Assembly: GCF_947568905.1 (NCBI RefSeq)
Contig: NC_079164.1
Location: 111,228,001 to 111,292,000 of the forward strand
Origin: Ostrea edulis
Lineage: Eukaryota
Reading direction: 5' to 3'
DNA length: 64,000 nucleotides
Shown: positions 8,820 through 45,560 of the stretch, piece after piece
Layout of the letters: the number at the start of each line of letters is the position of its first letter
Position numbering within the stretch: position 1 is the stretch's first letter
Program-made: the position numbers and the translations under genes
The notes under the pieces: model-generated
Database searches by the model: none
Told to the model about the DNA's origin: nothing
Seen by the model: only the letters and a program-made list of their open reading frames with translations

Positions 8820-9107
8820 GGCCACCATTGAAACCCACTAATCTAACATTGGTATGTGACACTTTGTCAGTAAAGTTATCATGGATTTCCAACTTTAATG
8901 GTGGAGACAGTCAGACATTTAAGATTTCCTATTCCACTGTTGGGGATTCTACCTATAAAGATCTAAAGACCATCAGTGACAAAGGTTATGGCAGACTTCA
9001 CAGTTACACTCCCAGTATTGAGTTACAGGGGACAGTATGGTTTACTGTGACTGCCTCCAACATGTTTGGGAATTCTACATCAGATTATGTCCATTGCATT
9101 CTTAAAG
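8820..9107 (+). CDS. Receptor gene exon A: fibronectin type III domain (nephrin-like Ig/FN3 receptor)
   Basis: ttacttacag|GG...AAAG|gtaaat, phase 1-1, 288 nt. Reads GPPLKPTNLTLVCDTLSVKLSWISNFNGGDSQTFKISY...VWFTVTASNMFGNS. The W-x-x-F-N-G-G-x-x-Q-T-F and A-x-N-x-x-G motifs fit the membrane-proximal FN3 of nephrin-like proteins. Confidence 0.9.
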
Positions 9108-9796
9108 GTAAATATTATATTCAACAGTCACCCCTGGGATATTTCAAAGGGAATTTCTGAAAGCCACTCACTATCAGAGATGCAACACAGCGTAGTTTCC
9201 GTCATTTAGCATCGATTAGTCCTTTCTTTGAAAAATGTGTACTGGTAATTAGAAAACAATTTTAGAAATGGTTATTTCATCATTTATGACTATCATAACA
9301 AACGTTTCACATATGCATTTAGACCTATATATGCATGTTTCTAATAACCGTATATATGAGGTTTCTTTACCGTGCCAATACCTACAGGACACCTTACGTT
9401 TGTAGAGAATCATACTCGGGCACACGATTGCGAACCAAACACCTTGTCGATCGGACTACTGCGACCGGTCTATGAAAAAAATGAATATCTATTATTGCAA
9501 ATAAATTAGCTTTGTACTAGGTATTCATTGTCGGTCTCCATCCTTCTATTAGTTTGAATTTGATGCAACTCGGTTAAATTGTTTTCTTTTTTCGACAATG
9601 GTTGAAAACAGGAAATTATCCACGGTATTCTTACGAAATTGTTACTTTAAACAAGGTATCAAATATTAATTACATGTAAAATAGATATTCATTTTGACAG
9701 TTTATAGAAAATACTAAATGTACAGTGCACGTAAATTGATTATAACACATTTAATTTTTCATCATTAGAGTACCAGTACTTAAAGGGAAAAATCAA

Positions 9797-10110
9797 ACAG
9801 GAAACTGGAAAAACATTTGAACACTGATATGATATTTCACGGGATGAACACACGCACACTCAAAGAAAATTGAAATGAAGCTGGTGACATAGAGATAATT
9901 ATTCATGAATCTTTCAGCTTAAAAACACATACCGACCATAACAAAATCTGAACTTGACATGGTAAAGCAATGTCCAAATTTCAAATAAATATATCTTAAG
10001 TATCATCAAAAAGGTCAGGAAAACGTATTTGCCGGAATGACAGACAGATGGACGGATGAACGAAGTGCAAACTTAAAGTCCCTCTAGGCTCCGACGGTAG
10101 TGGACTTAAA
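9797..10110 (-). mobile_element. Probable Helentron-type non-autonomous element remnant
   Basis: gacagacagatggacgga microsatellite followed by the short hairpin aagtccctct...gtggactt, the usual end arrangement of such elements. Boundaries approximate. Confidence 0.4.
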
Positions 10111-11486
10111 ATCGAAAGCTAAGAAAATGTCATTACATTTTTATTTAGAAATTTCTTTGCACTGATTTGACGAATATAAATATTTTTCATAAAGTAATGT
10201 CATTATGATGGAATGCTCTAAATTTTCTTGTTGAATTACATATTTCACTGTAGATCACTTCGTTGATCCTCGAACACAATGTATCTTACTATTCCACAGC
10301 CCAAATCAGAATAATATATGCACTTTTCAAAAAACCATCTGCTTGGTCATACAGGGAATCAAATGTATGCCACCGCTGAAGCGGATAATTATATATTTTG
10401 TTAATGTAGTAGTGTATGTTTTGTGTATGATATGGATATATTTTCTGCTTTATGATTTAAGAAATGAAACTTATAATTCGTTGTTTCATGCATGTATCAA
10501 ACGAAACATTGGATGGAAAACTTCATCAATGCACGTAGCGCATTGATGAAAAAGTTGTCCGTCCAATTTTGCGTTTGATACATGCATCAAACAAAGAATT
10601 ATAAGTTTCATCTCTTATCATTTAATTATGTTTTCAAGATAGAAAAACAAATAATTTCTCCGGTCAAAAAGCTTGAATTAACGTTTTTGAAATGGTGCGT
10701 AGGAATACATATATGTACGAATGAAAACAACAACAACATGGCATGGCTGTGTGTTCAGGTCAGGTACAGTTACTATGCAGATTTATATGGATTATACGCC
10801 AAATTAAAGGTGCAATGGTTAAAAGCTGAATTAAATATATAGGAAGAAAACAAATGGTGACTGGATTTATGCTGCATTGTGTTTGAGGAGACGTTGAACA
10901 CCGGTTGTGTCGTCGGAACGGTGGAATGCAGCACGGCTCCATTTCAATATCGAGTAAAAAATTCAACACCTCTTCATCTAAAACTCACTTGTTGACTGCA
11001 TTCGATATATCGCAGTTCAATTTCATTAATATTTACCAGATCAGACGTCTTTTTCTACCAGAAAGTGGATCTACGTCATCAAGTTGACTATTCTGCCACG
11101 TCATTGCCTTTGTATGTTGTTTCATTAAATTAATTTGTATTTTATTCATATCTTTATTTGTGCTTATTTTTGATAGCAATGAAAAACAAACATCAAACGA
11201 ATGCATTTCGTTATATATAATGCTTGTGTGGAAAATCCCGTTCTATAGATAGCGCTAAAATTAGAAAGGGGAAGACGCATTCCAGAGAAAAGTATTCCGG
11301 CGTGCTTAGTGCAGATGAACTCCAAAGGAAATTTTGACACAGAAATCAAACGCATTTTTCAACCAATCAGCGTCGTTCTTAAGTCATCTCTTTAAAAGTT
11401 ATTAAATGATATATAAATGTAAATTAAAGTTAAAATTCAAGTTCTGTCATCTTAAAAATGAAAAGAACGACCAGTAACCATTTTCA

Positions 11487-11632
11487 CAAATCTCATAAAA
11501 AGTATAAAACCAATAGCACGGCAAACACGGACTCATGGACACATTAGAGGCGGGTTTAGATGCCTTGGAGGAGAACGTATCATCCGCCAATAGACTATAC
11601 CCGCCATGGACTCTCCATCTTGATCAGGTACA
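11487..11632 (-). mobile_element. Diverged Naiad-type 3'UTR fragment
   Basis: ggcaaacacggactcatggacacattagagg...cttgatcaggtac. Confidence 0.7.
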
Positions 11633-11796
11633 CAGAATAATCTAAGTGTTTCAAAAGGCGTACGTGAGAGTATTTTCTGTGCTTGATCAAATTCTAAACC
11701 AAGATTATTTAAAGTCAGCAATTTTACAAATTTTATGGTTACTGTTGTAATAGTCCTGGTAACTCCGCTTACTTAATCAATACAAAAGCTTACGGC

Positions 11797-11950
11797 GTAT
11801 GTGAACGGTCAGCAAGGTATGCTTACTCCTCCAAGGCATTTGATCCAACCTGTAATTTTTACAAGAATCCGCCTTTACCGTGTTCTCAATTTTGTATTTT
11901 TAAAGGATTTATGAGATTGATTACTGTTCGTTATCTTCGCCCATTTTATA
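11797..11950 (+). mobile_element. Diverged Naiad-type 3'UTR fragment
   Basis: atgcttactcctccaaggcatttgatcc...tatgagattgattactgttcgttatc. Confidence 0.75.
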
Positions 11951-12082
11951 CATTAAGGGAACTATTCAAGTAGGAAATATGTATACCATTTCCCCAAATG
12001 CTTGTTTGAGAGAAAGGTCAGTATACATGTACCCGATAGACACGGAAGACTTTTTGTTGATTTTATTTGTCATTGTATTTAG

Positions 12083-12217
12083 TAGGAATACAAGAGGAGG
12101 TCAGCCGTCAGACGGAGACGATTGTCGGCAGTGTTGTCGGCAGTGTGGCGTTCATCATCGCTGTTTTAGTCCTTGTGATCTTCCTTCGAAGGCGTTATAA
12201 ATGCACCTGCAGAATAA
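12083..12217 (+). CDS. Receptor exon B: transmembrane helix and stop-transfer sequence
   Basis: Tandem acceptor tttag|tag (12083 or 12086, both in frame), donor A|gtaatg, phase 1-1. Reads (V)GIQEEVSRQTETIVGSVVGSVAFIIAVLVLVIFLRRRYKCTCRI: a hydrophobic run followed by RRR. Confidence 0.85.
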
Positions 12218-12408
12218 GTAATGTATCAATCTTTCCTAAGAATTTATATATGTTTTGAATAGCATATCTATACACATTTCAACAACGAATCTTTTAACGT
12301 AATTCAACACTTTTCTTAATACAAAATTTCATAGATATTATTATAAATTTTATTCGCCTGTCCTCTGTCCGTCCCACATCTGATTTGTGTTTAGCTCATT
12401 TTCAAATA

Positions 12409-13906
12409 TACTAGCGGAAAAAAGAAACTGTGCATTGTAAAATTTCGTACAATTTTTCTATATTTATTGTTTATGTTTATAAAATCTAAACAATCGATAA
12501 AGGTGATGTTTTTTTAACAATATCGGATAGTACCCGACTCAGATGCACGGACGTTTTCATGGTTAGTGAACACGTTGTTTATTGAAGTGTTCGTACGCAC
12601 GATTTTTTCTGGCTAATACTGTTTGGAGTAAGAAGTGTAAAAGGTTTGTTTGGATACTATTCGTTACGGAAAGCACTTTAGTTTTGACAAAATTTACCCT
12701 TCTGTCATGCCACGACTCGGCAAAAACCAACGTAATCGTGCTGTTGAGATGCTTCAAGCTGGAATGGCACAAAATATCGTAGCAAGAAACTTTGGAGTTC
12801 ATCGGAACACCACCCAGTCATTATGGAGACGTTTCCAACAATATGGTAACACTCGGGATCGACCACGTTCTGGGCGTATTCGTGTGACGTGGCGTCGACA
12901 GGACAGCCATATTATACTTATGCATCCGAGAAATCGTTTCCAGACAGCACGTTTGACTGCTCATAGCATTCCTGGACTTCGACCAATCAATCCAAGAACT
13001 GTCCGTAATCGTCTACGCGAGCACAACATCAGACCAAGACGTCCAGCGGTGCGCCCAATACTGCTTCAACGTCATCGTATCGTCATCGTATCGCTAGACT
13101 AGCGTGGTGCAGACGACGTCTGCGATTCAGAATACAGGACTTGGACAATATTCTGTTCACTGATGAATCCAGATTTCATTTGGATAGCAGTGACGGCCGT
13201 TGTAGAGTGTATCGTCACGTTTGGGAGCGGTGTCAGGATGCTTGTGTTGTGCAACGTCCACAATTCGGTGGAGGTAACACTATGGTGTGGGGTGGAATAA
13301 CAGCACGTGGAAAGACCCCTCTACAAATTGTCAATGGAAATCTCACCGGCGTACGCTATCGAGACGAAATTATTCAGCGAAATGTGATACCATTCATACA
13401 GAGACAGCAAAATCACATCACTCTGCAGCAAGACAATGCAAGGCCACATGTTGCACGTGCAGTCAGGGACTTTTTTGTTCAACAGAATGTCGATGTCTTA
13501 CCTTGGCCAGCTGTTTCCCCTGATATATCGCCGATTGAGCACGTCTGGGATGAAATGGAACGACGTCTATCCTGTTTACCAAATCGGTCAGTGACATTTG
13601 CTGATTTAGGCCAGGCTTTAACCATATCTGAACACTTTAGTGGCATCAATGAGGCGCCGTTGTCAAGGATGCGTGAATGCAAATGGTGGTCACACGCGTT
13701 ATTAACTTTGTTAATTCAAGTTCGAATACAAGTGTCTTTCGAGTGTGCTGAAATTGACGTTATTCAACGTAAACAGTAATGGAATATGAAATGTTGTAAC
13801 GAATACATTTGTTAACAGTATTACAAAAAATAAAAAAAAATCATTCTTATTTATCATTATTTTCTTCATATATTAAATAATGCACAGTTTATTTTTTCCG
13901 CTAGTA
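12409..13906 (+). mobile_element. Complete Tc1-family DNA transposon
   Basis: 28-bp TIRs tactagcggaaaaaa(g/t)aaactgtgcatt with one mismatch, flanked by TA on both sides (12407-08, 13907-08). Encloses a transposase gene. Confidence 0.95.
12707..13705 (+). pseudogene. Tc1 transposase (DD34E), frameshifted
   Basis: MPRLGKNQRNRAVEML (HTH), FTDESRF, QQDNARPH-(34 aa spacing)-SPDISPIEHVWD, ending GGHTRY*. Broken by an 11-bp tandem duplication near 13071-13092 and a deletion near 13625. Confidence 0.93.
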
Positions 13907-15931: not shown

Positions 15932-15950
15932 AAATGGAGATAGAGCGCAT
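15932..15950 (+). CDS. Receptor microexon (19 nt, KMEIER)
   Basis: Strong acceptor cttttcttttttttattttgtag and consensus donor gtaagt. Phase 1 to 2, exactly bridging exon B and the next exon. Confidence 0.75.
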
Positions 15951-16200
15951 GTAAGTTTCGCTAACATCACCTATTGCAATCATTTCTGCATACTTGTAGG
16001 GTGAAATGAACAGTTTTGAATTTATGTCTAGTCTCGAATGCAGTATTAAGTAACAAAGAAACATAGATCATTACAGAGGTTTTCAAAATAATATTTTGAA
16101 TGTTTCTTTTTTCGAAAGCTATATTTAATTTGCTCCTGAGTATCGTATGTTACAGTCCTCTAAGTCTCCATTTAGCACACAACACTTTCCATTAAATGTA

Positions 16201-16440: not shown

Positions 16441-16445
16441 CATCA

Positions 16446-17925: not shown

Positions 17926-17984
17926 AGATGAAAATGTAAAAGCAGCTGAACTGTCTCAAGATGGATCTCAAATATCTTTGGCAG
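17926..17984 (+). CDS. Receptor cytoplasmic exon (IDENVKAAELSQDGSQISLA)
   Basis: ttgtattatag|A...GCAG|gtaagt, phase 2 to 1. An alternative in-frame acceptor at 17911 would add QLYYR. Confidence 0.75.
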
Positions 17985-21381: not shown

Positions 21382-21403
21382 AGCAAAATATACAGGGAGA
21401 AAG
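21382..21403 (+). CDS. Receptor microexon (22 nt, EQNIQGE-R)
   Basis: ttgtatttttcag|AG...AAAG|gtagat, phase 1 to 2, required to put exon 28799 in frame. Confidence 0.65.
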
Positions 21404-28798: not shown

Positions 28799-28863
28799 AA
28801 GTGTGTATGAAGAATTAAAAGAGCGGGAAACTGGAAATCAATACCAGGATCTCTCCACTAAAG
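28799..28863 (+). CDS. Receptor exon carrying ITAM-like motif 1 (RSVYEELKERETGNQYQDLSTK)
   Basis: gtccatcag|A...AAAG|gttatg, phase 2 to 1, open frame with YEEL-x8-YQDL. Confidence 0.8.
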
Positions 28864-28989
28864 GTTATGTATTGTTTTAATCTGGATTTGAAAACTTACA
28901 TTTTATTATACTAATTTTGATAACAAGTGCTAAGATGTAATTATTTTCTTTATACAGGAAATCAAGAAAGTAAAACGTAAGATGAATAT

Positions 28990-28992
<3 letters not shown>

Positions 28993-29069
<77 letters not shown>
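28993..29069. repeat. (CT)n microsatellite
   Basis: Perfect dinucleotide run. Confidence 0.99.
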
Positions 29070-29072
<3 letters not shown>

Positions 29073-29323
29073 CTCGTCCTATTTTGCGATTCAGCGTCAT
29101 TCATCATACTTTCAACTTCCTCTCAAAAAATATATACCTTGTCAACGATAACCGAATTTAGTGTGTATAGTCTTCTGGGGAGAGGAAACAAAGACATTGT
29201 GAATGTTGTTTACTGTCCCTAGGACGTTATTGTTGAGGACAAGTTCTAATTTTGACTAGGGACGTTAGTAAATATAAGTGAACTATTTGTTTTTTATTCA
29301 GTTTTATAATGAAGGAATATTAG

Positions 29324-29345
29324 AAGTTCATACTCTGCAAAAAAG
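29324..29345 (+). CDS. Candidate receptor microexon (22 nt, EVHTLQK-R)
   Basis: A phase 1-to-2 exon is needed between 28863 and 35114. This one has the same length and E...R ends as 21382-21403. Its acceptor is weak; a longer form 29302-29345 with a strong acceptor plus a phase-0 donor at 28868 gives the same frame. Other candidates are 29450-29489 and 34807-34819. Confidence 0.45.
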
Positions 29346-29737: not shown

Positions 29738-31372
29738 TGAGTTACGTACCTATACTGGATTCCTAAACCACATACAAACCCTTACTAAAGATACATTGCT
29801 GGATCTAGTAAGTACACTACCAAGCCCCTATCGTTGCTCCTCACTAAAATATTAATAGCTGTGAAGGAGAAACTTCAAACTTACTGTGCCACTACATATG
29901 CCAGAAGTCGTGTAAATCCAATGTGGATTCTAAAAAAAATTGAAAGAACGTTTAGTAAACTTGAAATCGGAAAACTTTTCTCGAATGAGCACCATCAAAA
30001 CGTCTGACTTTTCAACACTTTACACAACCACTCCTCATGATCAATTAAATACTAGACTTTGTAACCTCGTAGATAATTGCTTCTTCAACAAAAATGGAAA
30101 ACGCAAATATCTCCTCACGAAAATGTTAACAGCTGTGAAGGAGAAACTTCAAACTTACTGTGCGACTACATATGCCAGAAGTGGTGTTAATCAAATGTGG
30201 ATTCTAAAAAATTTTAAAGAACTTTTAGTAAACTTGAAATCACAGAATTTTCCCCAAATCAATAGCAATAAAACCTATGACTTTTCAACACTATACACGA
30301 CAATTCCTCACGATAAATTAAAGACTAGACTTTTTGACATCATAGACAGTTGCTTCTTCAACAAAAACGGAAAACGGAAATATTCATATCTAGTGATCAG
30401 TCATTCCAAAACTTCCTTTGTTAAACACAACTCTGATTCCACGCACAAGTACTCTGAAGTTGAAATAAAAAATATGCTAGAGTTCCTCATTGACAATATC
30501 TTCGTGGTCTTTGGTGATCAGGTCTTCCAACAGTCTGTTGGAATTCTCATGGGCACGAATTGTGCTCCTTTGTTAGCTGACCTGTTTTTATATTCATATG
30601 AAGCAGAATTTATTCAAAAACTTCTACGTGAGAAGAAAAAATCTCTCGCTGTGACCTTCAATTCGACTTTTAGATATATCGATGACGTTTTGTCTATTAG
30701 CAATGATAGCTTTCATTCATATGTCGCTTTGATATATCCCTGCGAGCTCGAAATAAAGGACACCACAGAGTCGTCCACTTCTGCTTCATACTTAGATATT
30801 TTATTGAAAGTAGACATTAAAGGCAAACTGACAACTCAACTGTATGACAAACGGGATTATTTCAGCTTCTACATCGTCAACTTTCCACATTTATGTAGCA
30901 ATATTCCATTATCACCTGCATATGGTGTTTATATATCTCAACTGATTCGATATGCAAGAGCTTGTTCTAGGTATAGTCAGTTTTGAAATCGAGGTAAGCT
31001 ACTGACAAACAAGTTGATGGTACCGGAATTCCAACAGTCTCGATTGAAGTCAGTATTTCGCAAATTCTATGGTCGTTATAACGATCTAGTTCGTCAATAC
31101 AACCTCGCATTGGGTCAAATGCTGTCTGGCGTGTTTCATACCTATTGTTAAGCCGTTCATGGCACACTGATTTTGAGTGCGGATAACTCCGTTTACCTGA
31201 TCAGGATATGGGGCTCACGGCGGGTGTGACCGGTCAACAGGGGATGCTTACTCCTCCTAGGCACCTGATCCCACCTCTGGTGTGTCCAGGGGTCCGTGTT
31301 TGCCCAACTATCTATTTTGTATTGCTTGTAGGAGTTATGAGATTGATCACTGTTCGTTAACTTCACCTTGCA
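29738..31372 (+). mobile_element. 5'-truncated Penelope-like retroelement of the N-terminal-EN (Naiad) type
   Basis: RT motifs YDFSTLYTTIPHD, GILMGTNCAPLLADLFLYSYE, FRYIDDVL, YLDILL, LYDKRD, YISQLIRYAR. The frame ends at ...VFH(T/P)xC* with no C-terminal GIY-YIG domain, followed by the conserved 3'UTR with no poly(A). The clade call rests on recalled Naiad features. Confidence 0.8.
29940..31152 (+). pseudogene. Naiad-type reverse transcriptase remnant
   Basis: 348-aa ORF 29940-30986 that continues past a premature TGA to the normal stop near 31150. Contains an internal duplication. Confidence 0.85.
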
Positions 31373-31552: not shown

Positions 31553-33410
31553 ACAATGATAATGATGATAATAATAATAATAACAATAATGCCCTTTATT
31601 TAAACAGGATGGTACAATTAGCTTAAAAACCAGTGTATATTGTGGTTCTGAAAATATATATACAGACAGCAGTATTATACAGATACAATATAAAATAGTA
31701 TATGAAGGTATGTTGCATACAGACATATACGCTATCTACATATTCAAAACTGAAACTAAATAAATAGATAAATAAAATGAAACTGAAAATGATCAAAAAC
31801 AAATCTATATAGTTTTAATTTCCCGAAGATAAGCGGATTTGAAAGTTTCCAATGTTTGGTAATATTTTAAAAATTCTGGCATATCATTTCAATTGTAAAA
31901 TATCTTCTAAAACATTGTGTCTAAATTTCCCGCTGGATATATAATGAATTACTTTGACTTAATCTGGTGGATATACTGCTAACTTTATGAACATACTGAA
32001 AACATCTAAATAAACGGGGGCAGACCAGGTAAAACTTTGAATACAAGAATGATAGTTCTATATACAAGTCCGAAAGAAGTATCCATCTAAGTTGTTGCAT
32101 CATTTCTGTTGTAGGTGTATACAAATTTCTATTTAAAATCACTCTAGCGGTTCGCTTATGAACTTTGCATTGTTTGTAAAAACCATCCTTGTTTTTCATA
32201 TTGCACCAAATAGTACAACAGTAGTTAAAATGAGGAAAAACACTTGTATTAATTTTTTTCAGTAATAATTCGGTTGACAAGAATGAATGTAATCTAGATA
32301 ACACACCTATTTTGCTTGCACGTTTTAAAAAAAAAAGTTCAACATGTCAGACCACGTGAGACATCTGTCAATATAAACACCAAGTAGTTTTGCACATGAT
32401 ACATTTTCTATGGCGATATTGTCCACTTTTATCAATAGTTTTCTACAATTTCTTAATCTTTTGTACGTACCAATCATCATGCACTGCGTTTTCTGGAAAT
32501 TGATTGTAAGTTTGTTTTTATCCATCCACTCCAAAGTATGTTTAAGATCCATATGTAATTTGTTTTCTATAACATCTATACTTTTATCCGAGACATCCTG
32601 AATTGTATCGTCAGCATGCATATGGGCTGCAGAGTATTGTAAGCAATCTGTATAGTCATTTACATATAGAATAGAAAACGAAGGACTAAGTATTGTTCCT
32701 TGGGGTATCCCTATTGTAATATCTAATTTGTCGGACTGAATTCCATTCCATCTAACATATTGTGATATATTTGTTAAACAAGATTTAAACCAATGGTATG
32801 AATTCTCACATATTCCAAACGACAGTAGTTTGTGAAGTAACACGTCATGATTTACCGTGTCAAAAGCTTTACTTAGATCCACAAATAAGACACCTGTAAG
32901 TTTTCCATTGTCAATGTTTCGTAACCATTTTTCAAAAATACTATGGAGAGCTGTTTCACATGAATGTTTTCGTCTGAAACCAGATTGTTTTTCATTGATA
33001 AGATTGTGACGTATTAATTATTCGTAAAAATAATTGTGAACATGCCTTTCAATAATTTTGCTGACAATAGGCAGAAGACACACTGAACGGTAGCTATTGA
33101 CCAAAAACGTTTCACCAATTCTGTACAGTGGGGTAACCCGTGCATTTTTCCACTCATCAATAAACACATTCGACTTAATTGAAGAATTCATAGTATGTGT
33201 TAAAATATCGCCTATTACATGAATGCTAAGTTTTAGAAGTTTAACAAAGACATCGTCTAAAGCAGTAGATTTTGAGTCACACATAGACAAAACCTCAGCA
33301 CTAACAAAATGTTCGCTGATGAGATGTATTGAAAATTAACCTTTCAGCAGTTATTGCTTAACACTGGGTAATATATTGTCAAATTAAGCTGCATAGTTGT
33401 ATTCGATATT
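31553..33410 (-). mobile_element. 5'-truncated L2/CR1-group LINE (RT, 3'UTR, (ATT)n tail)
   Basis: Minus-strand ORFs with WKNARVTPLY, YRSVCLLP, DLSKAFDTVNHDVLL, GIPQGTILSP, HADDT, LLGVYID and FNYCCTIW. The 3' end reads gtaccatcctgtttaaataaagg followed by (att)n. Confidence 0.92.
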
Positions 33411-35113: not shown

Positions 35114-35190
35114 GCAAACTTATGAGACCATACAAGGACCCAGTGCTGACAATAAATACGAAGAACTTTCAACGGTTTCTAAAAGACAAG
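35114..35190 (+). CDS. Receptor exon carrying ITAM-like motif 2 (QTYETIQGPSADNKYEELSTVSKRQ)
   Basis: caatttctag|G...CAAG|gtaagt (consensus donor), phase 2 to 1, with YETI-x8-YEEL. Confidence 0.85.
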
Positions 35191-38100
35191 GTAAGTCCAA
35201 TTATATATAGGAATTCTTGTGTTACTGTTTAACCACTGCTCAATGTTGTTGGGTATTAACGGTAACTGCAATTTACGAAATCACGATGCATATCACATAC
35301 CTACTATGATTTCATGAAAAAATGTTTATAATGCTGTTCATTAATATTGACACGTGTCATTTATGGGATTACCCGACGTAAAGGATAAATCCCAAGTGTC
35401 CAGGTCCCATCTTTACTAAAGTTCGTAGACGTAAACGTAAAGTAAATCTAGACGTTTACGTGTGGGATGTTATTCACTAATAGTCGTAGACGTAGATTTA
35501 CGTCAGAAATAAGTGTAACTCTACGTGTGCTATACTAGTACACGTAAGCTGATCATAACTTTAAGAATAAACAAAGCAAATGGCGACTTGTCATTTGTAT
35601 CGATAATTTCTTGCGTAAAGACCTTACAACCCCTCTAGATGCATATAAGCTGGTTATTAATAAACAAATTAATTGTATTTATCCAGATTATCGATTTTTT
35701 TTAGATCATCTGCAATTGTGTGACAATTCTCATTTAATCCCGATCTAATTTACATTGTGGCGCATCTCAGTCCGATTTAAAATCCCACCACGCAGCGACT
35801 GTCCGTATATCTGGTAAAGTGAGAGGTTTGATTTTAAATCAGACTGGGCGGATCTAACCTTGCCTTTAGAAATAATTGGGAAGAATTTTATTTTAGTCAT
35901 GCAGGATATTAAAAAAAGAAGAAGAATATTTGCCATTTATCTTATTATATAGGGTAGATCTAGCATCTTTCAGGGAAATACATTTTTTAAATTTTCCAAA
36001 CATGGTGGAATTAATGTATATATATGCAATCAAACATGCAGTGTTTTAGATTTGAAAAGAAGAGAGTCACTGTGTATACAAGAATACATGGTGATCGACA
36101 GCTATAGAAACACTATTTCTACTGGATTGATAGGTGAGCTTTACTTTGTGGTCATAAGCAAATACTGGTAGTCCAAAATAACTATTTGTTACATTGTAAC
36201 TTACACAACAGGGAAATGAGCCTCTAAATCAATATTTCTTTAAAGATATGCATTTCATTCTAAGAATACAATTTGGTGAAATTTGTTTCAGAGAGCAATT
36301 GTGATGCCTACTAGTGTAGTCATGTGTAGATTTTCAATCTTTCAGAGTGCCATTTCCTATTAACTATAATCCTACATGAGTCAAACCTTCATTGATAATG
36401 CATCTATGAATCTTTCTACCATTCATGATTTGTATGCAATTGACCTTTATATGTGATCAGCTAGGTAAAAATCGTTGCATTATATATTACCAAACTCCAA
36501 GGATGATGCCTTCAACATACATATTTTTTGTTGAAGACCCCCCCCCCTTACAAAAATATCATTGATAAAACTTCATTCTGAAGGCTTCTCACATTAATCC
36601 GACATATGTACTAATGACCCTCTTTACAAATTTTAACCCACTAGGCAACATTGTTGACAACTATTTAAGATTTATTTAAATTGTCATATTTTTAATATAA
36701 AGATGTTAAAATCATTCTAGAAATGAAAGTAATACATGTACATGTCAATATCAATAACAACATGAAAATTCATCTAAAAATTTATCTATTTAACAAATAT
36801 AATTACATGTACATAATTGTATGTATAACAATGCATGTACTTAATTTCTTAAATATGTATTGTAACAAATTCTATTTTACTGTCAAATGTCCATACGATA
36901 TAAATGAATAAATAAATATATATGATGATATCAATGTAGCAGATGGACCATCAGCATGGCTTGGTCAGTGGGTAGAGTACCAGACTACGGGTCATGGGTT
37001 AGATTCTCAACCCTGCCATATATTTTTGAATCATTCCTCTGCTCGTCCTTTCACACAATCATGGCAATAGAAGATTAGCATTTCTCGGTTTCGCAAAAGA
37101 TTTTTTAGGATTACAGTATTGTACCCATATACCTTAAAAAATAATAGTATTACATTGATTTAAACAACTGTCATTAGACTGCAATCAAATTTCATAAGGG
37201 TTGAAAAATACATGCAACATAATTGTTATTTAAATAAACTGTAAAATTGTGTTAATACTGATTTTATTGTATATTTATCTACACCATATCTGGGAAGATA
37301 TCAGCAAGTATCACCTACAATTTCTAGTTTTAATGATTTATAACCCAAGAGCCCATAACAGGAAAAAGATTTCAAATGACCCCAATGTCAACTTTAGTAT
37401 TTCTTCATTACCCATTCCCCATTGTAATGAAATTGGCTTCTTTCCAAAACATAAATAAATACTCTTTAACGAAGAATGGTAAGTTTCAATTAAAGACATA
37501 CACGTTTCTAAATAAAAAAAATAATTTGTCGTGACATTTTAAGTACAATTCACTTGCATTCTATTGTGTTTCTACAAAATTCTCAGGTTTGATTTAGTCT
37601 ACAGTTAACATATTTTGATAGTTCTTGGTTGTGGCAAGTAAAATTGTAAAATCAGCTGATATGTACTGCAGTAAGCTATATAAATGGGATTTTCCTGTAA
37701 CAAAGAAGGTGAGAAAAATCTTTAGAACAATTGAGTATCGAACCTGGTACCTGTACATTACTACATTACTAGTTAGGTGATCTAACCACTGAGCTACTCG
37801 GGCTGACATATAATGCATGATAGTACTACACTATAAAGGACAAGGTACGGTTTTAGCCAAAATCTGCCCTGTCAAGGAAATTCACCAAAATACTAAATCT
37901 GGTATTTGAGAATGTGCCATTTATGAAAATGACCATTGTTATTCTTTATCTACCATAGTAGTTGTAATATATTCAACGGAAAACTTTATATTAACCTGAC
38001 GACGTCACCAAATTTGACGTTAATTTTGACGTAATATACGAGAGTTCTCCCCAAGCGATGTTTTGAGTAGGAAAATAAAAACTGTATCACACATAGAAGT

Positions 38101-38593: not shown

Positions 38594-38683
38594 GTATACT
38601 CAGGAAAAAACGCAGTGTTTCTGAGAAAGTAGAAACACAACTTCAAAGGGAAGATAATTATGAAACGGTTATGGTTATCAGTG
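38594..38683 (+). CDS. Receptor exon with a single tyrosine motif (GILRKKRSVSEKVETQLQREDNYETVMVIS)
   Basis: tgtcatttcatag|GT...AGTG|gtagga, phase 1-1, 90 nt, with acidic context EDNYETV. Confidence 0.75.
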
Positions 38684-39115: not shown

Positions 39116-39135
39116 ATGAAAAACTTTTAAAGTCA

Positions 39136-39141
<6 letters not shown>

Positions 39142-39200
<59 letters not shown>
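39142..39200. repeat. (CT)n microsatellite
   Basis: Perfect dinucleotide run. Confidence 0.99.
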
Positions 39201-39205
<5 letters not shown>

Positions 39206-39924
39206 TATATCATGCCTCAAACAGACCATCTCTCATATACATATTCACACACACTCTCACTCACCACTATCAGGCTTCTCCACAAAAAAATCGTCAATGT
39301 GTTCGGTACTGTACAACTGAGCGATACAAAGCTGGTACACCCCAACACTTGGTTTGAGCAATTTAGTGTCATTGTATCCACTTTTGCCCAAAGAAACCCT
39401 CTTAAAAGTTGTAAAATACAAAAATCATTCGATAGTTTATACAAGAGAAATAAAACTTAAAGACTTGCTAACCAACCCCTGCCCCATGATAAAAGTAAAC
39501 CATTCAAATATAAACTGCATTTTCTCATTATGCAAGTATATACATACATCGTATATTTATCTCGAATGGAGAAAATTTGACTTAAAATTTTGACGGAATG
39601 CTCAATACTGAGAATCTCAATATTATATTTGTATATATCCATATGTTGTGTATTCGCATTGTGTAGGCCTAACTCCCCTCCCCCGGACTGCATTTTATAG
39701 TAGTAGAGAAAGATAGATGAAATGTAATTGTAAGTGATACATTGGATACATGTAATCAACCCACTCCATTGACCAATGATACCAAAATCCCTATTTTTGT
39801 GTTTGTCAATGTTTTCGAGAAGTCACCCCCCCCCCTTTTTTTTGGTTGAAAAAAACGATCTATGCGCCTATAATCTTGTAAATTAAAATACATATCGTAA
39901 TACAAGTAACACATATGGAGCAAA

Positions 39925-40263
39925 TTAGTGTTTGTACAAAGACCTATGGAGATCGAAGGTTTGATGTAACAGCTGCCACACTATGGAACAGCTTACCGAT
40001 AGACACCCGTTCGTGTGGTACTGTCAAAAGTTTTAAGACAAACCTCAAAACATATCTTTTTATGAAATCTTATAACCATATTTTGTAATATATTCTTTTT
40101 TAAAGTAAAGGCTGGTTTGTCGCATGAACTCGTAATGTTTAAATTGTTTTATTTTATTGGATGTTATATTTTATGCTCTGATTAATCTTATGTTTTACAT
40201 TTTACATTGTTAAAGCGCTTAGAGTAATTACAAATTATATAAATGCCGCACATTATTATTATT
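39925..40263 (+). mobile_element. L2-type LINE 3' end
   Basis: TKTYGDRRFDVTAATLWNSLPIDTRSCGTVKSFKTNLKTYLF, then aaagcgcttagag...ataaatg and an (att)n tail. Confidence 0.75.
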
Positions 40264-40496
40264 TATCTTTCAGGCACCTCAATCATACCATTTAAAAATA
40301 ATTTTAATGAGTAACATATATTCCTTCTAGGACTAATGCAAGTAAAAAGTGCCTTGCAAGAAATGTATATTAATCCTTATCTTAGCTACACAAACTTTTT
40401 TTGTTTTGTATTGTGTTTTCAAAAATGAAAGTGAATTCGTGTTCCGAAATAGTTTTGTAACCATTGCAGATATATTAAAACACGGAAGACCCCCAG

Positions 40497-40660
40497 TGCC
40501 ATTCGTTTTTAAGGTGATTTCCGATCACCTGATGCCGAGCGTTTGGCGATGGAACTGTCACTACCAGTTTTAACGACTTAGGTCTGTCGCGGCCGGGATT
40601 CAAACCCCGGGCCTTCCGCATGCGAGGCGAACGCTCTAACCGCTCGGCCACCTCGGCGGT
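40497..40660 (-). mobile_element. Well-preserved 5' part of the tRNA-derived SINE family
   Basis: Minus strand gccgaggtggccgagcggttagagcgttcgcc...gtttgaatcccggccgcgacagacctaagtcg matches 7980-8110. Confidence 0.85.
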
Positions 40661-41272
40661 GTATATTTAGAGATAGTGTGCGTAAAATTCTATATTCGTG
40701 AATAACCATCGTAAACTTTCTGACAAATAAATTGTTGTCTTTGAAAAATATAAAATGTTACACTCGCACTAAATACGTCACTGATGTACGTACGTACCTA
40801 GGTGGATATTGTCGTCTGCTGTTACATGTAATATACCACATGCCGTTTCCCATTTAATCAAATGAATGTGAATGGTAAAAAACAATGCTTGAATCTTCAA
40901 GGAATATATTATTTATTAAAAGAATCGTCCATCGTTATATAAACTATTTAAATGTAGTTTGCCTGATATGTAACATAAATTCTCACGAATCGTCGGTTGG
41001 TGCTATTTATACACCGTTCTGTTTACGCTATAGTCATAACAACAAAAATGGCATCCGGTCTGTAAGATAGGCTTAAATTTATCCGGATTTTTATTATTAT
41101 TATGATGATTTTAATAAATGTCAATGTGTTTAAATAAATAACTATATGAACATATATTATTTGAAAATATATTTACTACTCAAGTGATTCTCGTTTCCTC
41201 TTCAACCGCCACGATCAACGCAAATTGCGTCACGATGGCGAATTTGTTAGCATCTTTCAACTGATATTTTAA

Positions 41273-41376
41273 CCCCTCTTCCATCGTCGCCCGGGATAAA
41301 ACTAAGAAGAATTGTAAGTTATTTAGTAAATTTTTAATCCATATAAAAATTATTCCCGGCGACGAGGGAAGAGGTG
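41273..41376. repeat. Short inverted-repeat (MITE-like) element
   Basis: cccctcttccatcgtcgcccgggataa pairs imperfectly with ttattcccggcgacgagggaagaggtg across an AT-rich spacer. Confidence 0.55.
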
Positions 41377-42319
41377 TTCAATTTCACAAGTTCATCAATA
41401 CAAAAACCATGAAAACACCACAAATAGCCTGAAAGTCCTTACTTTATTTGATTATGTACTACGCATGCGCGTAGATGAGTTGATTTACATACGCTTTTGA
41501 GAGTTACTATAAGTTACTTTTTTAGGAATTTGACAGGAAAATATCTGCAACGCAAAATAATTTTCCTCCATAAACGCCGGGCAGAATTTGGCCAAAACCG
41601 TACCTACTCCTTTAAAGGGGCATATTTGCTGTGAAAGTGATGGCAACAATTTCTATCTCTCAAAATATCCCAATGGCAAAGGAATATGTATTACTGACTA
41701 ATAAAAATATTTCGTTTGTAAAAGAAAAAACAAAAACAAAAAAACAAGAGAAACCTAATAAAACTACATTTGATAACCGCTTTTAGTGTAAAGAAATATA
41801 TTAAGAAAAATTATTCGCTTGCAAGATAATACTTATTTAATCACCAAAATTATATATTCATTTGCTTGCTTTGAGATTAAAAGGTGTTTGAAATAACTGA
41901 ATACTTGTGTTATTACTGAAATATATAATATAGAACAATTTTTATTGAATTCAAATTTTGGTGACAACATTACAGCTAATGTCCCTTTAAAATTATTTTG
42001 GAAATCATGCAAGAATTCTTCATATCGAGGAGATAAAAAATAATTTCAGAGAAACATAGTGTATGTCCTTAGATTGGTTAAATTTCTATTCGCCAAAAAG
42101 GTGAAGAGATGCTAGACAGACAGGTACAAAACATGCAAAATAGACAAACTTTGATCATAAAAACTCATAAATTTATGTTCTTAAGTCTTTGCCTAAGGTT
42201 TTAATCATCAATGCATTAAGAAAATCATTACATGTACCATAATTTATTTTGATTTTTTAAAACTTTGTAAGTACAGAAATGATTATGTGTACAAACAGTG
42301 GATATTAAAATTATTGTGC

Positions 42320-42976
42320 CAGGAACGGCCTAACAATCGGTATGAAACAAGTCAGTGAATATAGCAATATTCCATTATCACCTGCATATGGTGTTTATTT
42401 ATCTCAACTGATTCGATACGAAGAAGCTTGTTCTGTGTATGGTCAGTGTTTAGATCGAAGCAGGCTACTGACAAACAACTTGATGGTGGAGGGGTTTCGT
42501 CAGTCTTGTTTAAAGTCCACATTTCGCAAATTCTATGGTCGTTATAACAATCTAATTTGCCAATACAACATACCATTGGGTCATATTCTTTTTGAAGTGT
42601 TTCATGCCGATTGTTAGGCCGTTCTCGGCACAATGATTTTGACTATGGATAGGTATGTTTAACTGATCATGATATAGGGTTCACGGTCAGTTTGAATATA
42701 TTGAAAAAAAATCCGGGGTAAATGGAAAAATAGGATATTAAAATCAATTTTAACACAATAATTGTGCATTAACTTATTAAATACATTGTTTTAATTTATG
42801 ATAATATCCGTTTAGATGATCAGGAAATAGGGCTCACGGCGGGTGTGACCAGTCGACAGGGGATGCTTACTACTCCTAGGCACCTGATCCCACCTCTGGT
42901 GTTTCCAGGGATCTGTGTTTACCCAACTATTTATTTTGTATTGGTTATAGGAGTTATGAGATTGATCGTTGTTCGT
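42320..42976 (+). mobile_element. Naiad-type 3' end with an inverted 5' piece and an internal interruption
   Basis: 42320-42357 is antisense Naiad sequence joined directly to a sense copy starting SNIPLSPAYG. About 130 bp of AT-rich sequence interrupts the UTR at 42687-42815. Confidence 0.85.
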
Positions 42977-44529
42977 TATTTTCACATTTAATTTTCATTT
43001 TGAAAAATAAGATACCAAAATATCGTAGATAATCATACGGAAAAGGTAGAATTAGATGTTTTAAATACATTTATATCGGGATTGAAGTTCCCATTATAAC
43101 GAACCCATTTGTATACACTACTATTGTGCCGACGATTTTTTGAGTCGTTTTTCTGTCAACGTGTGCAAGTTGTAGTGACGATGTTATGTTGTTGTTACTG
43201 ATCAGTAGTTATTAACACTAACGGTCGATTGAACTTGATATACAACACCGCGTAAACAAGACAGGACCCAATATTTCTTTGTTAGGCCCAGAGGCCAGGG
43301 GCTCAGTTTTAGGGTGTTTTGCACAGGGAATTGTCATGTTTAAAGAAAAAAGTAATTCTTCTCAGAGAAAGAATGTTTATGACCCCCTCCACCACATCCG
43401 AAGATTACTACTTTTTTATACATGGTCATATGACTTAAGGTAGTTCCAAACTCTTGTGAAATCCATATTCACCTATAAATAAGTATCTTTTGAAATTTAG
43501 TAATCTAATTAAATAAACCCCAATAATACTGTACAAATATTCAATGATGTTATGATTTAATAAACTCTCTATGAACTCGTTTATCTTGTTTTACCATAAC
43601 TGAATTATTATTACAAAATGAATCACTGTTGAGAGTTGCTCGTTCAGGGAGTTACTACTTTAAGGTCACCTTAGCTAAGTTTTTCCCAACCTACGTCACT
43701 GTTTATCAGTACTCTCAGTACCAGTGCTTTGATAAGTTGTCTTTTATTTACAAACGGAAAATATTGTTGTTGTCTCTATTTTTTGACTTGGAAAGACAAA
43801 TATGATGTCACAATGCTCTCTCGGCTGGCGTTATATTCCACGTGTTAAATGAATATGCAGATTATGTAATTCTCCTCATATGTTCCCTCTTTAATATTTG
43901 GACATTACTGAGCGTTGTGCACAAGGCAAATTTTATAGGCAATGAATATTTTCAAGTGAAAGGCTATTTCCACTTCTAATATTTATCGTACTTAATTAAC
44001 TGAATTCTTGCATAAATGATTTTCACTTAGAACGTCAATTACCATTTCATGCTTCGCGCGGTCCAACAGTCACATCGGATATGCATATTAATGATAATGA
44101 TAAAATAATAATCATGGTACCGTTGGTTGCTGTGGGAGCAGCAATGTGATAATCACAGTTTCAAACAAAATAATAAGCAATCAGAGACATGCTCGTCGGA
44201 GACTAGCTGATGAAGAGCAAATTACTTGACTCAAATGTGTAATCTCGTCGATGCAACGCGCTTTCAAATTCTCATTTGAACTTCAATGCCAAAATAATTA
44301 GAAAGGTAGAAAGAGCTACATAAAAATGGTTCACACTGTGAGTGTAACCGAAGAAAAACTCAAGGTTACCCATTAGAAAACTATATGAAATGAAAATTTA
44401 ACGAAAACAACACAAAATATGTTACTTCACCATGTAACGTAAATAATACAAAATATAGTGGTTCAACAACAGGACTTGGTATATTGTGTAACCGTTATTA
44501 GTTTTCAGCTAAGACGGATAATCTAAAGG

Positions 44530-44770
44530 CACGGCTTCTTCTTCAAACGCTCGACATTCAGCAGTGAGAGTTGCAAGTCTTTACGGTGGGCTTTAATAAC
44601 TAACATCCCCTGTCACGGCAAGTGTTGTTATGATAAAGAACCCTCACTGCTAAAGCCTTTTAAAAGCGCCATGCATCAATCGAAATTGATGGCGCTTCAC
44701 AAACAGTTGGTGATATTTCCATATCAATAGAAAAAATCAGAGCGATGTAAAAAAAACAAACAAAAAAACA
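44530..44770 (+). mobile_element. Diverged tRNA-derived SINE body
   Basis: caaacgctcgacattcagcagtgagag...cccctgtcacggcaagtgtt...gataaagaaccctcactgc...A-rich tail. Confidence 0.6.
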
Positions 44771-45121
44771 ACTGACAAATTAGTTCAAGGAAGGTTTATG
44801 TATGAGCAAAGTGACTCAGGTGTGTTTTGGGATCATTGGTCTCTAATTAAGTTTATTCAAAAACATGGATGAGATTTGCAATCCCGCAACCTTCTCGTGA
44901 CGTTTAGTTTAATTAGTTAATAAAATGCTCAATATAATACATTCTAAACAATGAAATTGAATATCTAAAAAAAATAGAAAATTCAGGATTAAATCGTGAT
45001 TTTGAACTTAACGGGACTGGGTTAAACTCATATCCTAACTAAGTTCTAACTTGTCAAGGTGAAGTCGATCCCAATCGCATTCATGCAATGGAATTAATTT
45101 ACATTTCCTGATCAAACAGAT

Positions 45122-45190
45122 TCAGGACAATGAAAGGTGAAAATAACAATAGTGATCAATCTCATAACTCCTATCAGGAATACAAATTAA
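45122..45190 (-). mobile_element. Naiad-type extreme 3' fragment
   Basis: gaaaggtgaaaataacaatagtgatcaatctcataactcctat. Confidence 0.7.
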
Positions 45191-45480
45191 ATTCAATTGT
45201 TGAGCGTAATGTGATACGCTTTAGTTCTGTTTTCATTTCTCTTTTTTACTAATTTGTACAGAAATTCTCGTTACATCATTATATTACTTTCATGTGATTT
45301 CATTTAATGTCGCGCTCTAGTTTACTACTACATGCCTTCTACTTTCAATTTTTTGGGCATCGGATGTATGATTATGTTCATGTTATTTTTATTCAAAAAA
45401 AGATAACTGATCATTCACAATTCCTTTGCTATGTACTCTAACAATAAAATATATCAATGAAATGAAAGTTGATTTTCCAG

Positions 45481-45560
45481 ATCAGAGAGATCAGACTTAC
45501 TACAACTCCCAGACGGTAACGCCCACTGATGTGTACGTCAACACCCCATTTCAGAACTAG
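45481..45560 (+). CDS. Receptor terminal coding exon (DQRDQTYYNSQTVTPTDVYVNTPFQN*)
   Basis: gttgattttccag|AT, phase 1, open to TAG at 45558-45560, with two YxN motifs. It closes the 10-exon model in frame (857+1 nt = 286 codons including the stop). Confidence 0.75.

What the first reader, a model, noticed from the sequence alone, without database searches (positions are those of the whole stretch)
8820..45560. Hidden nephrin-like receptor with two ITAMs and five-plus tyrosine docking motifs
Joining canonical splice sites gives one continuous frame: FN3, TM, then ...RRRYKCTCRIKMEIERIDENVKAAELSQDGSQISLAEQNIQGER-SV[YEEL]KERETGNQ[YQDL]STKEVHTLQKR-QT[YETI]QGPSADNK[YEEL]STVSKRQG...EDN[YETV]MVISDQRDQT[YYN]SQTVTPTDV[YVN]TPFQN*. 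Seen in sequence: splice sites, phases and motifs. Established: YxxL/I-x6-8-YxxL/I is the ITAM that binds Syk/ZAP70 tandem SH2 domains, YxN binds Grb2-type SH2 domains, and an ITAM-bearing Ig receptor has been reported in oyster haemocytes. Inference: this is an invertebrate activating immune or adhesion receptor combining double ITAMs with Grb2 sites in one chain, probably from an expanded family that automated annotation mis-models because of its tiny exons. This is the best candidate for an undescribed system in the window.
Basis: partly seen in the sequence, partly recalled or inferred. Interest (0 to 1): 0.78.

Follow-up and report, generated by a model that had tools for sequence, protein, structure and literature searches.

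The report
Oyster Ig-receptor gene with ITAM-like tail
The window holds the back half of a real oyster cell-surface receptor gene whose inner tail carries two conserved ITAM-type tyrosine pairs and two Grb2-type sites.

Summary
On the + strand, nine exons with canonical AG/GT sites and consistent phases join into one open frame from 8820 to the stop at 45560. They encode an FN3 domain, a transmembrane helix and a 123-residue tail.

Every exon, including three microexons of 19-22 nt, has a collinear counterpart of the same length and phase in two tandem Ostrea edulis paralogues. The product is 80-95% identical to RefSeq models named hemicentin-like, NCAM1-like or uncharacterized.

Two reader exons fail:
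- The microexon at 29324-29345 should be 28958-28976 (GNQESKT).
- The "EDNYETV" exon at 38594-38683 has no counterpart and lies in repeated DNA.

The corrected tail has YEEL-x8-YQDL, YETI-x8-YEEL, YYN and a C-terminal YVN. Tail tyrosines are 84% conserved across 11 oyster tails, against 48% for other tail residues. Shuffling the tail gives two ITAM patterns in about 1 of 10,000 trials.

Full-length paralogues carry a signal peptide and many Ig domains. No Ig exon lies in the window.

No RNA data were available, so Syk or Grb2 recruitment is inference. An ITAM-bearing Ig receptor that binds Syk (CgIgR) is already published for the Pacific oyster.

Verdict: a new member of a known kind. The scan had noted this same stretch before (s1-302149).

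The parts
8820..9107 (+). FN3-domain exon (288 nt, phase 1 in and out)
   Evidence: It is 95% identical to the O. edulis hemicentin-2-like model P0135 and 82% to P0003. The AlphaFold model has pLDDT 89 and is all-beta. The top Foldseek PDB hits are FnIII domains such as myomesin, Ihog, Robo3, DSCAML1 and titin. Pfam alone gave only weak hits.
12086..12217 (+). Transmembrane exon (132 nt, phase 1/1): 23 hydrophobic residues followed by RRRYKCTC
   Evidence: tblastn to paralogues gives 80-96% identity. There is a tandem NAGNAG acceptor at 12083/12086, and paralogue proteins fit the second AG. A counterpart exists in both L001 genes.
15932..15950 (+). Microexon 1 (19 nt, KMEIER, phase 1 to 2)
   Evidence: AG/GT sites are present. 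Paralogues read KMGIERI or KMEIERI. There is a 19-nt counterpart in both L001 genes, and the exon is 95% identical against 66-75% for its flanks.
17926..17984 (+). Exon 4 (59 nt, DENVKAAELSQDGSQISLA, phase 2 to 1)
   Evidence: It is 100% identical to P0135 residues 879-897. Counterparts exist in L001.
21382..21403 (+). Microexon 2 (22 nt, EQNIQGE, phase 1 to 2)
   Evidence: AG/GT sites are present. It is identical in P0135 and has 22-nt counterparts in L001.
28799..28863 (+). ITAM-like exon 1 (65 nt): SVYEEL-x8-YQDLSTK
   Evidence: It is 96% identical to P0134 and P0135. Both tyrosines are conserved in 9 of 9 oyster tails that have this exon.
28958..28976 (+). Microexon 3 (19 nt, GNQESKT).
   Evidence: It is the only one of 94 frame-compatible candidates that matches the paralogues' GNQESKT / GNKESKT. 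There are 19-nt counterparts in both L001 genes.
35114..35190 (+). ITAM-like exon 2 (77 nt): QTYETI-x8-YEELSTVSKRQ
   Evidence: It is 96% identical to P0135. The first tyrosine is conserved 10/10 and the second 6/10. The +3 L/I residue is lost in two O. edulis paralogues.
36940..36997 (+). Candidate alternative exon (58 nt, frame-shifting), derived from repeated DNA. It would end the protein early, without the YxN sites
   Evidence: It is homologous to the extra exon in RefSeq model P0135 (ADEPSAWIGQWIEYQTTGHG), with AG and GT kept. It lies in high-depth repeated DNA and has no counterpart in L001. Its use in this copy is not shown.
45481..45560 (+). Last coding exon: DQRDQTYYNSQTVTPTDVYVNTPFQN, stop TAG at 45558-45560
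   Evidence: It is 81-92% identical to paralogue C-termini. The C-terminal YxN is conserved in 9 of 10 oyster tails. A terminal YVN also occurs in distant nemertean FN3 relatives.
45503..45732 (+). 59-bp tandem repeat, 4 copies, starting inside the last exon. Each copy re-encodes ...TPTDVY(V/I)NTSFQN plus a stop
   Evidence: Tandem Repeats Finder gives period 59, 4.0 copies and 90% matches. Two copies are seen at the same place in both L001 paralogues.

Best explanation
Shown: window 8820-45560 (+) is the 3' half of one copy of a tandemly expanded oyster gene family. The closest relatives are in Ostrea edulis. The family encodes type-I membrane proteins with a signal peptide, many Ig domains, one FN3 domain, a TM helix and a tail of about 120 residues spread over seven small exons. 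The tail carries conserved tyrosines: a juxtamembrane RRRY, two YxxL/I-x8-YxxL/I pairs, a YYN and a C-terminal YVN.

Inferred: ligand binding by the Ig ectodomain clusters the receptor. A Src-family kinase then phosphorylates the paired tyrosines. A Syk-type kinase docks on them through its tandem SH2 domains, and a Grb2-type adaptor docks on the pYxN sites, driving ERK-type signalling in haemocytes or other cells. This mirrors what was shown experimentally for the C. gigas ITAM receptor CgIgR.

The Ig exons of this copy must lie upstream of the window, if they exist.
For: Gene structure:
- Nine AG/GT exons give one open frame.
- All nine have collinear, equal-length counterparts in both tandem paralogues of L001.
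- The product is 80-95% identical to RefSeq proteins P0003, P0133, P0134 and P0135.
- The FN3 fold is confirmed.

Family:
- Full-length paralogues have Ig_3, I-set and C2-set domains plus this FN3, TM and tail.
- Members occur in O. edulis, Saccostrea cucullata, C. gigas and C. virginica.

Motifs:
- Tyrosine columns are 84% identical against 48% for other tail columns.
- Two ITAM patterns arise in 1.3e-4 of tail shuffles.
- The tail otherwise evolves fast (dN/dS 0.7-1.0 against 0.24-0.31 for FN3), as expected for a disordered tail held only at short motifs.

Precedent: CgIgR, with an ITAM of the same 8-residue spacing, binds CgSyk and activates ERK (PMC6994640).
Against: - There is no RNA evidence. 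The four runs that hold this DNA behave as genomic contigs and cross the exon-intron border at 35190.
- No Ig or signal-peptide exon lies in the 8.8 kb upstream, whereas three paralogues have the preceding exon 1.2-2.4 kb away.
- The classical acidic residues before the ITAM tyrosines are missing.
- The second YxxL of ITAM2 is lost in two O. edulis paralogues and in Crassostrea.
- YEEL, YETI and YQDL also fit Src-SH2 and YxxPhi sorting motifs, and SVYEEL fits the ITIM consensus.
- Phosphorylation and binding partners are untested.
Confidence: 0.55

Rival explanations
1. It is an adhesion or recognition molecule of the nephrin/SYG-2/NCAM type. Its tail tyrosines would be general phosphotyrosine docking sites or YxxPhi endocytic sorting sites for Src-family SH2 domains, AP-2 or PI3K, not a Syk-coupled ITAM module.
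For: - The ectodomain of the closest complete paralogue best matches SYG-2 among solved structures (E 6e-15).
- NCBI names for family members are all adhesion-type.
- All four YxxL/I sites also fit YxxPhi, and YEEL and YETI resemble the Src-SH2 optimum pYEEI (own knowledge).
- P0134 has YESM, a p85-type motif, at the ITAM2 position.
- The second half of ITAM2 is not conserved.
Against: - The pairing at a fixed 8-residue spacing is conserved for ITAM1 within Ostrea and in C. gigas, although the spacing ranges from 6 to 10 residues elsewhere in the family.
- Such pairing is very unlikely by composition.
- Nephrin's YDxV motifs are absent from the tail (sequence).
Confidence: 0.25
2. It is an inhibitory or dual-function receptor. 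SVYEEL would act as an ITIM, or the pairs as inhibitory ITAMs, recruiting SHP- or SHIP-type phosphatases as reported for the oyster receptor CgNCAM1.
For: - SVYEEL fits (S/I/V/L)xYxx(I/V/L). IVYEEL, VQYEEL and SLYDEL fit it in several relatives.
- CgNCAM1 (3 Ig + FN3 + TM + 2 ITIMs) binds SHIP2 and dampens inflammation (PMC11841013).
Against: - The -2 position is not conserved: it is N or G in other paralogues and N in C. gigas.
- CgNCAM1 is a different gene. Its cloning primer encodes a C-terminus ...EEDERL, unlike this family's YxNTSF end.
- Relatives with clearly ITIM/ITSM-type tails exist separately (P0010, P0063).
Confidence: 0.1
3. This particular copy is a 5'-truncated partial duplicate holding only FN3, TM and tail. 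It would not make a receptor, even though the family is functional.
For: - There is no Ig exon anywhere in the window.
- In three paralogues the preceding exon is 1.2-2.4 kb upstream of FN3.
- Homology to L001 stops 9 bp upstream of the FN3 exon, while it runs 140 bp downstream.
Against: - All nine exons are intact, with canonical sites and no stop codons.
- FN3 dN/dS is 0.24-0.31.
- The acceptor and pyrimidine tract are intact, and a related contig (P0001) shares the upstream intron end.
- The upstream 8.8 kb is full of dispersed repeats that could simply have stretched the intron.
- RefSeq genes in this cluster span 110-485 kb.
Confidence: 0.2

Closest known systems
RefSeq paralogues in Ostrea edulis: XP_055999867.1 (uncharacterized LOC125655883), plus models named hemicentin-1/2-like and NCAM1-like (P0133-P0135, P0127)
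   Same: They share the same FN3, TM and seven-exon tail, with the same tyrosine motifs and exon lengths. Identity is 80-95%.
   Different: The window copy is not identical to any retrieved model. Several models are chimeric, truncated or frame-shifted. The upstream Ig part of this copy was not seen.
CgIgR, the 'BCR-like' ITAM receptor of Crassostrea gigas (PMC6994640)
   Same: It is an oyster Ig-superfamily type-I receptor with an ITAM in its own tail, of the same 8-residue spacing (YTEL-x8-YEKL). It was shown to bind Syk and activate ERK in haemocytes.
   Different: CgIgR is described with five Ig domains, one ITAM and no FN3. The ITAM sequences differ.
CgNCAM1 of C. gigas (XP_034303240.1; PMC11841013)
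   Same: It has Ig domains, one FN3, a TM helix and a tyrosine-motif tail, is expressed in haemocytes, and has NCAM1-like naming.
   Different: Its tail is reported as two ITIMs that bind SHIP2. Its C-terminus, read from the cloning primer, is ...EEDERL and not YxNTSF. It is a different gene.
Single-chain ITAM receptors: vertebrate FcgammaRIIA and CEACAM3, and Drosophila Draper with Shark kinase (own knowledge, not tested here)
   Same: The ITAM or ITAM-like pair sits in the ligand-binding chain itself, not in a separate adaptor.
   Different: The ectodomains are unrelated. Those receptors have one ITAM with other spacings, while this tail has two pairs plus two YxN sites.
Immunoglobulin tail tyrosine (ITT) motif of membrane IgG (PMC4263166, title and abstract only)
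   Same: A YxN-type tyrosine that recruits Grb2 works alongside ITAM signalling.
   Different: In the B-cell receptor the ITAMs and the ITT lie on different chains. Here both kinds of motif are on one chain. This is an analogy only.
Nephrin / SYG-2 / Sns family
   Same: Paralogues share the multi-Ig + one FN3 + TM architecture. SYG-2 is the best solved-structure match.
   Different: There are no YDxV Nck-type motifs, and orthology is not shown. NCBI's automatic names for the family are inconsistent.

Membership tests
ITAM-bearing immunoreceptor (motif class) | YxxL/I-x6-8-YxxL/I in the cytoplasmic tail | tested here: met
   There are two matches, both with spacing 8: YEEL...YQDL and YETI...YEEL. 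The chance of two matches given the tail's composition is about 1.3e-4.
ITAM-bearing immunoreceptor (motif class) | The motif lies on the cytoplasmic side of a membrane span | tested here: met
   A 23-residue hydrophobic stretch followed by RRR precedes the tail, and FN3 lies upstream of it. The topology is inferred from the positive-inside rule.
ITAM-bearing immunoreceptor (motif class) | Both tyrosines and the +3 L/I conserved in relatives | tested here: inconclusive
   ITAM1 tyrosines are conserved 9/9 and 9/9. For ITAM2 the first tyrosine is 10/10 and the second 6/10. The +3 residue becomes N, T, F or V in some relatives.
ITAM-bearing immunoreceptor (motif class) | Acidic residue two to three positions before the first tyrosine (classical D/ExxYxxL) | tested here: not met
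   ITAM1 has E at -4 only (GERSVY). ITAM2 has none (SKTQTY).
ITAM-bearing immunoreceptor (motif class) | Tyrosine phosphorylation and binding of Syk/ZAP70 tandem SH2 domains | not testable with these tools
   Only a precedent exists: CgIgR binds CgSyk in C. gigas (PMC6994640).
Nephrin / SYG-2 family | Many C2/I-type Ig domains + one FN3 + TM | tested here: inconclusive
   This is met in full-length paralogues. In the window only FN3 and TM are present, and no Ig exon was found.
Nephrin / SYG-2 family | Sequence relationship to nephrin/SYG-2 beyond generic Ig similarity | tested here: inconclusive
   SYG-2 is the top solved-structure hit for P0134 (E 6e-15). MDGA1, FcRL5, contactins and CADM4 follow closely.
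Nephrin / SYG-2 family | Cytoplasmic YDxV (Nck-binding) tyrosines | tested here: not met
   There is no YDxV in the 123-residue tail. The feature itself comes from own knowledge of vertebrate nephrin.
Fibronectin type III domain | Seven-strand beta-sandwich fold of FnIII type | tested here: met
   The AlphaFold model has pLDDT 89.3. The top PDB matches are nearly all FnIII domains, with TM-score up to 0.81. Pfam fn3 itself falls below threshold.
CgIgR orthologue group | Sequence homology to CgIgR | not testable with these tools
   No accession or sequence is in the held text and no supplement is held. The published ITAM string was not found in any of the 154 retrieved proteins.

The most novel reading that the evidence does not exclude
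The family could be the activating arm of a paired-receptor system in oysters. That would mean tandem arrays of multi-Ig/FN3 receptors whose own tails combine two ITAMs with a C-terminal Grb2-type YxN 'amplifier'. They would be matched by relatives with about 44% identical ectodomains but ITIM/ITSM-type tails (P0010, P0063). This would be an invertebrate analogue of KIR/LILR/FcR-type activating and inhibitory pairs, evolving by tandem duplication and exon-cassette shuffling.
Probability: 0.2. Interest if true: 0.7.

Novelty: new member of a known kind. Interest (0 to 1): 0.4.

Why it matters
Oysters lack antibodies but have hundreds of Ig-superfamily genes, and how these signal is known for only a few. 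This family gives a clear and testable case. One chain carries two conserved ITAM-type pairs and two Grb2-type sites. It is present in flat, rock, Pacific and eastern oysters, and it sits in tandem arrays that current annotation stitches together wrongly.

Correct exon models, including the microexons given here, are needed before expression or disease-association studies can count these genes properly. Bonamia and Vibrio studies in Ostrea edulis are obvious examples.

The concept of an ITAM-bearing Ig receptor that signals through Syk in oyster haemocytes is already published. The gain is therefore a better-defined family and a corrected gene model, not a new kind of system.

Tried and rejected
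It is one of 94 frame-compatible candidates, and homology picks 28958-28976.
It has no counterpart in any paralogue or in L001, and it lies in high-depth repeated DNA. I suspected a tRNA-derived SINE head at its 3' end and at 36940-36997, but Rfam and ARAGORN recognise only the tRNA-like element at 40585-40657. The SINE label is therefore not established.
- RNA evidence: the run search found no RNA run. The four runs laid are genomic-type contigs with no exon-exon joints.
- Ig exons in the window: tblastn with 11 family proteins found none.
- Link to CgIgR: no sequence or accession was available.
- Link to CgNCAM1: rejected, because its primer-derived C-terminus differs.
Loci L001 and L003 are other paralogues at about 80% identity.
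- Word-based protein searches from the Saccostrea tail found no Crassostrea members. Those came only from the exhaustive search.
- ITAM pattern counted over the raw window: not above chance.

Full report
**What is in the sequence**

The window is AT-rich animal DNA (about 35% GC) with many dispersed repeats. I rebuilt the model exon by exon. The nine exons are:
- 8820-9107 (FN3)
- 12086-12217 (TM)
- 15932-15950
- 17926-17984
- 21382-21403
- 28799-28863
- 28958-28976
- 35114-35190
- 45481-45560 (stop TAG)

All nine are bounded by AG and GT. The phases are consistent (1/1, 1/1, then three microexon-plus-exon pairs running 1>2>1, then the last exon). The product is an open 252-residue partial protein.

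**Outside evidence for the exons**

An exhaustive profile search with the FN3 exon found oyster proteins of 540-1050 residues. In these, the same FN3 is followed by the same TM segment and tail. They are RefSeq models from Ostrea edulis with assorted names: uncharacterized LOC125655883, hemicentin-1/2-like, NCAM1-like, peroxidasin-like and DSCAM-like. Related models come from Saccostrea cucullata (syg-2-like), Crassostrea gigas (syg-2) and C. virginica.

The closest is O. edulis 'hemicentin-2-like' (P0135). Its identity to the window is 95% in FN3, 100% in exon 4, and 96% in each ITAM exon. Earlier notes of this scan call the genome flat oyster, which fits.

In locus L001 (O. edulis OX387710.1) two tandem paralogues each contain all nine exons. 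They are in the same order, with the same lengths (one 6-nt indel in FN3) and the same AG/GT borders. This is strong evidence that the junctions are real, microexons included. It remains indirect, however. The run search returned no RNA run, and the four runs that hold this DNA are genomic-type contigs that read straight across the donor at 35190.

- The microexon 29324-29345 (EVHTLQK) is one of 94 AG..GT candidates of the right phase in that intron. The paralogues read GNQESKT or GNKESKT there, which is encoded by 28958-28976, only 95 nt after the ITAM1 exon.
- The 90-nt exon 38594-38683 (…EDNYETV…) has no counterpart in any protein or in L001. Joining 35190 directly to 45481 gives SKRQ-D-QRDQTYYN, which matches the paralogues residue for residue in length. 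That stretch also shows about 100-fold higher word depth and dozens of variant contigs compared with the unique ITAM2 exon, so it is repeated DNA. The tool warns that this depth is not a copy number.

The YETV motif must therefore be dropped.

**The tail**

The corrected 123-residue tail has eight tyrosines: RRRY at the membrane, YEEL-x8-YQDL, YETI-x8-YEEL, YYN, and YVN six residues from the C-terminus.

The ITAM pattern is common by chance in six-frame translations of this AT-rich DNA, with 38 hits against about 19 in shuffles. The motif alone would therefore prove nothing. Inside the real tail, though, two matches arise in only 1.3e-4 of composition-preserving shuffles.

Across 11 oyster tails, tyrosine columns are 84% identical against 48% for the rest. 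The per-site figures are:
- juxtamembrane Y: 10/10
- both ITAM1 tyrosines: 9/9
- first ITAM2 tyrosine: 10/10
- C-terminal YxN: 9/10
- second ITAM2 tyrosine: 6/10, with its +3 L/I lost in two O. edulis paralogues

The rest of the tail evolves almost neutrally, with dN/dS 0.7-1.0 against the L001 copies. FN3 gives 0.24-0.31. That is the usual picture for a disordered tail held only at short linear motifs. These counts are small.

**The ectodomain**

The FN3 exon folds confidently (pLDDT 89). It matches FnIII domains of myomesin, Ihog, Robo3, DSCAML1, titin and NCAM2. Pfam alone barely sees it.

Full-length paralogues have a signal peptide and five or more Ig domains (Ig_3, I-set, C2-set_2). Their best solved-structure match is C. 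elegans SYG-2, the nephrin homologue. MDGA1, FcRL5 and contactins follow closely. 'Nephrin-like' is thus fair as a description of architecture, but nephrin's YDxV motifs are absent and orthology is not shown.

No Ig exon is in the window. In three paralogues the preceding exon lies 1.2-2.4 kb upstream of FN3. Here 8.8 kb of repeat-rich DNA precedes it. The Ig part is either further upstream or this copy is truncated. I put the truncation at about 0.2.

**How it most likely works**

Shown: the gene structure, the family membership and the motif conservation.

Inferred: clustering of the receptor lets a Src-family kinase phosphorylate the pairs. A Syk-type kinase then binds through its tandem SH2 domains, and a Grb2-type adaptor binds the pYxN sites. 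The precedent is CgIgR of C. gigas, an Ig receptor with YTEL-x8-YEKL in its own tail. CgIgR binds CgSyk and drives ERK phosphorylation and phagocytosis (PMC6994640).

Rival readings:
- The tyrosines are generic docking or YxxPhi sorting sites in an adhesion molecule.
- The receptor is ITIM-like and inhibitory. SVYEEL fits the ITIM consensus, but the -2 position is not conserved.

CgNCAM1 (PMC11841013) has a similar layout with ITIMs and SHIP2. It is a different gene, because its cloning primer encodes a different C-terminus.

**Annotation quality**

- XP_055999867.1 joins exons of two tandem copies.
- P0135 includes a 58-nt repeat-derived exon that shifts the last exon out of frame. The window has the homologous piece at 36940-36997 with its splice sites intact.
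- P0136 and P0138 stop in or just after the TM region.
- Gene ranges in the chromosome-scale cluster are 110-485 kb.

No retrieved protein is identical to the window's product, and none was flagged as window-encoded. My searches could not see models of 240-409 residues, so I cannot say whether this copy is annotated.

**Novelty and verdict**

This is a genuine, probably functional member of an expanded oyster Ig-superfamily receptor family with a conserved ITAM-like and YxN tail. The family is already in public protein sets under uninformative names. The idea of an ITAM-bearing Ig receptor signalling through Syk in oysters is published. I found no paper describing this particular family or its dual-pair-plus-YxN tail, but my literature search was limited.

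Relatives with similar ectodomains but ITIM/ITSM-type tails exist (P0010, P0063; 44% identity to a C. virginica member). That leaves open a paired activating/inhibitory system as the most interesting reading.

I rate it a new member of a known kind, with moderate interest.

Noticed in passing
window 45503-45732: A 59-bp unit is repeated four times, starting inside the last coding exon. Copies 2-4 lie after the stop and re-encode ...TPTDVY(V/I)NTSFQN plus a stop. They carry the family-typical S where the translated first copy has P (TPFQN). Both L001 paralogues have two such copies at the same place.
   Followed up: partly
window 36940-36997: A 58-nt piece of repeated DNA has AG and GT borders. 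It is homologous to an exon used in the RefSeq model of the closest paralogue. If spliced in, it shifts the frame and ends the protein at ...SERSDLLQLPDGNAH, without the two YxN sites.
   Followed up: partly
window 12083-12086: There is a tandem NAGNAG acceptor (tttag|tag|GA) at the TM exon. Use of the first AG would add one valine. The TM exon is 132 nt and phase 1/1, so skipping it keeps the frame. One O. edulis RefSeq isoform of a paralogue (P0005) lacks the TM segment in just this way.
   Followed up: no
window 12641-13776 (+): A Tc1/mariner-type transposase remnant is split over two frames (HTH_Tnp_Tc3_2 and DDE_3). It sits in the intron after the TM exon.
   Followed up: partly
window 31924-33335 (-): A non-LTR retrotransposon reverse transcriptase (RVT_1, E 4e-25) lies in the intron between microexon 3 and the ITAM2 exon. 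A 350-residue open frame at 29934-30983 (+) has internally duplicated text and no Pfam match.
   Followed up: partly
window 56000-64000 (-): There is strongly negative GC skew and an RT_RNaseH domain at 57931-58179 (-). This is probably an LTR retrotransposon downstream of the gene.
   Followed up: no
window 40585-40657 (-): A tRNA-Ala(CGC)-like element was found (ARAGORN; Rfam tRNA 38.8 bits). It is inside the large last intron and may be a tRNA gene or a SINE head.
   Followed up: no
L001 10001-97300: The RefSeq protein XP_055999867.1 is a chimera. Its exons match tandem copy A at 100% up to the ITAM1 exon, but its last exon matches copy B at 100% and copy A at only 92%.
   Followed up: partly
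window tail exons versus L001: Synonymous divergence is much lower in the tail exons (dS 0.11-0.17) than in the FN3 exon (about 0.4). This hints at gene conversion or mosaic ancestry among paralogues. The counts are small.
   Followed up: no
proteins P0010, P0063, P0129 (Logan assemblies, species not named): These relatives have homologous Ig/FN3 ectodomains but long tails with VVYAAV, LLYVEV and TDYATV (ITIM/ITSM-type) motifs in place of the ITAM-like pairs.
   Followed up: partly
window 28990-29080 and 39130-39200; 51086-51141: (CT)n and (TA)n microsatellites give long SLSL... and YIYI... open frames. They inflate motif counts in six-frame scans.
   Followed up: no
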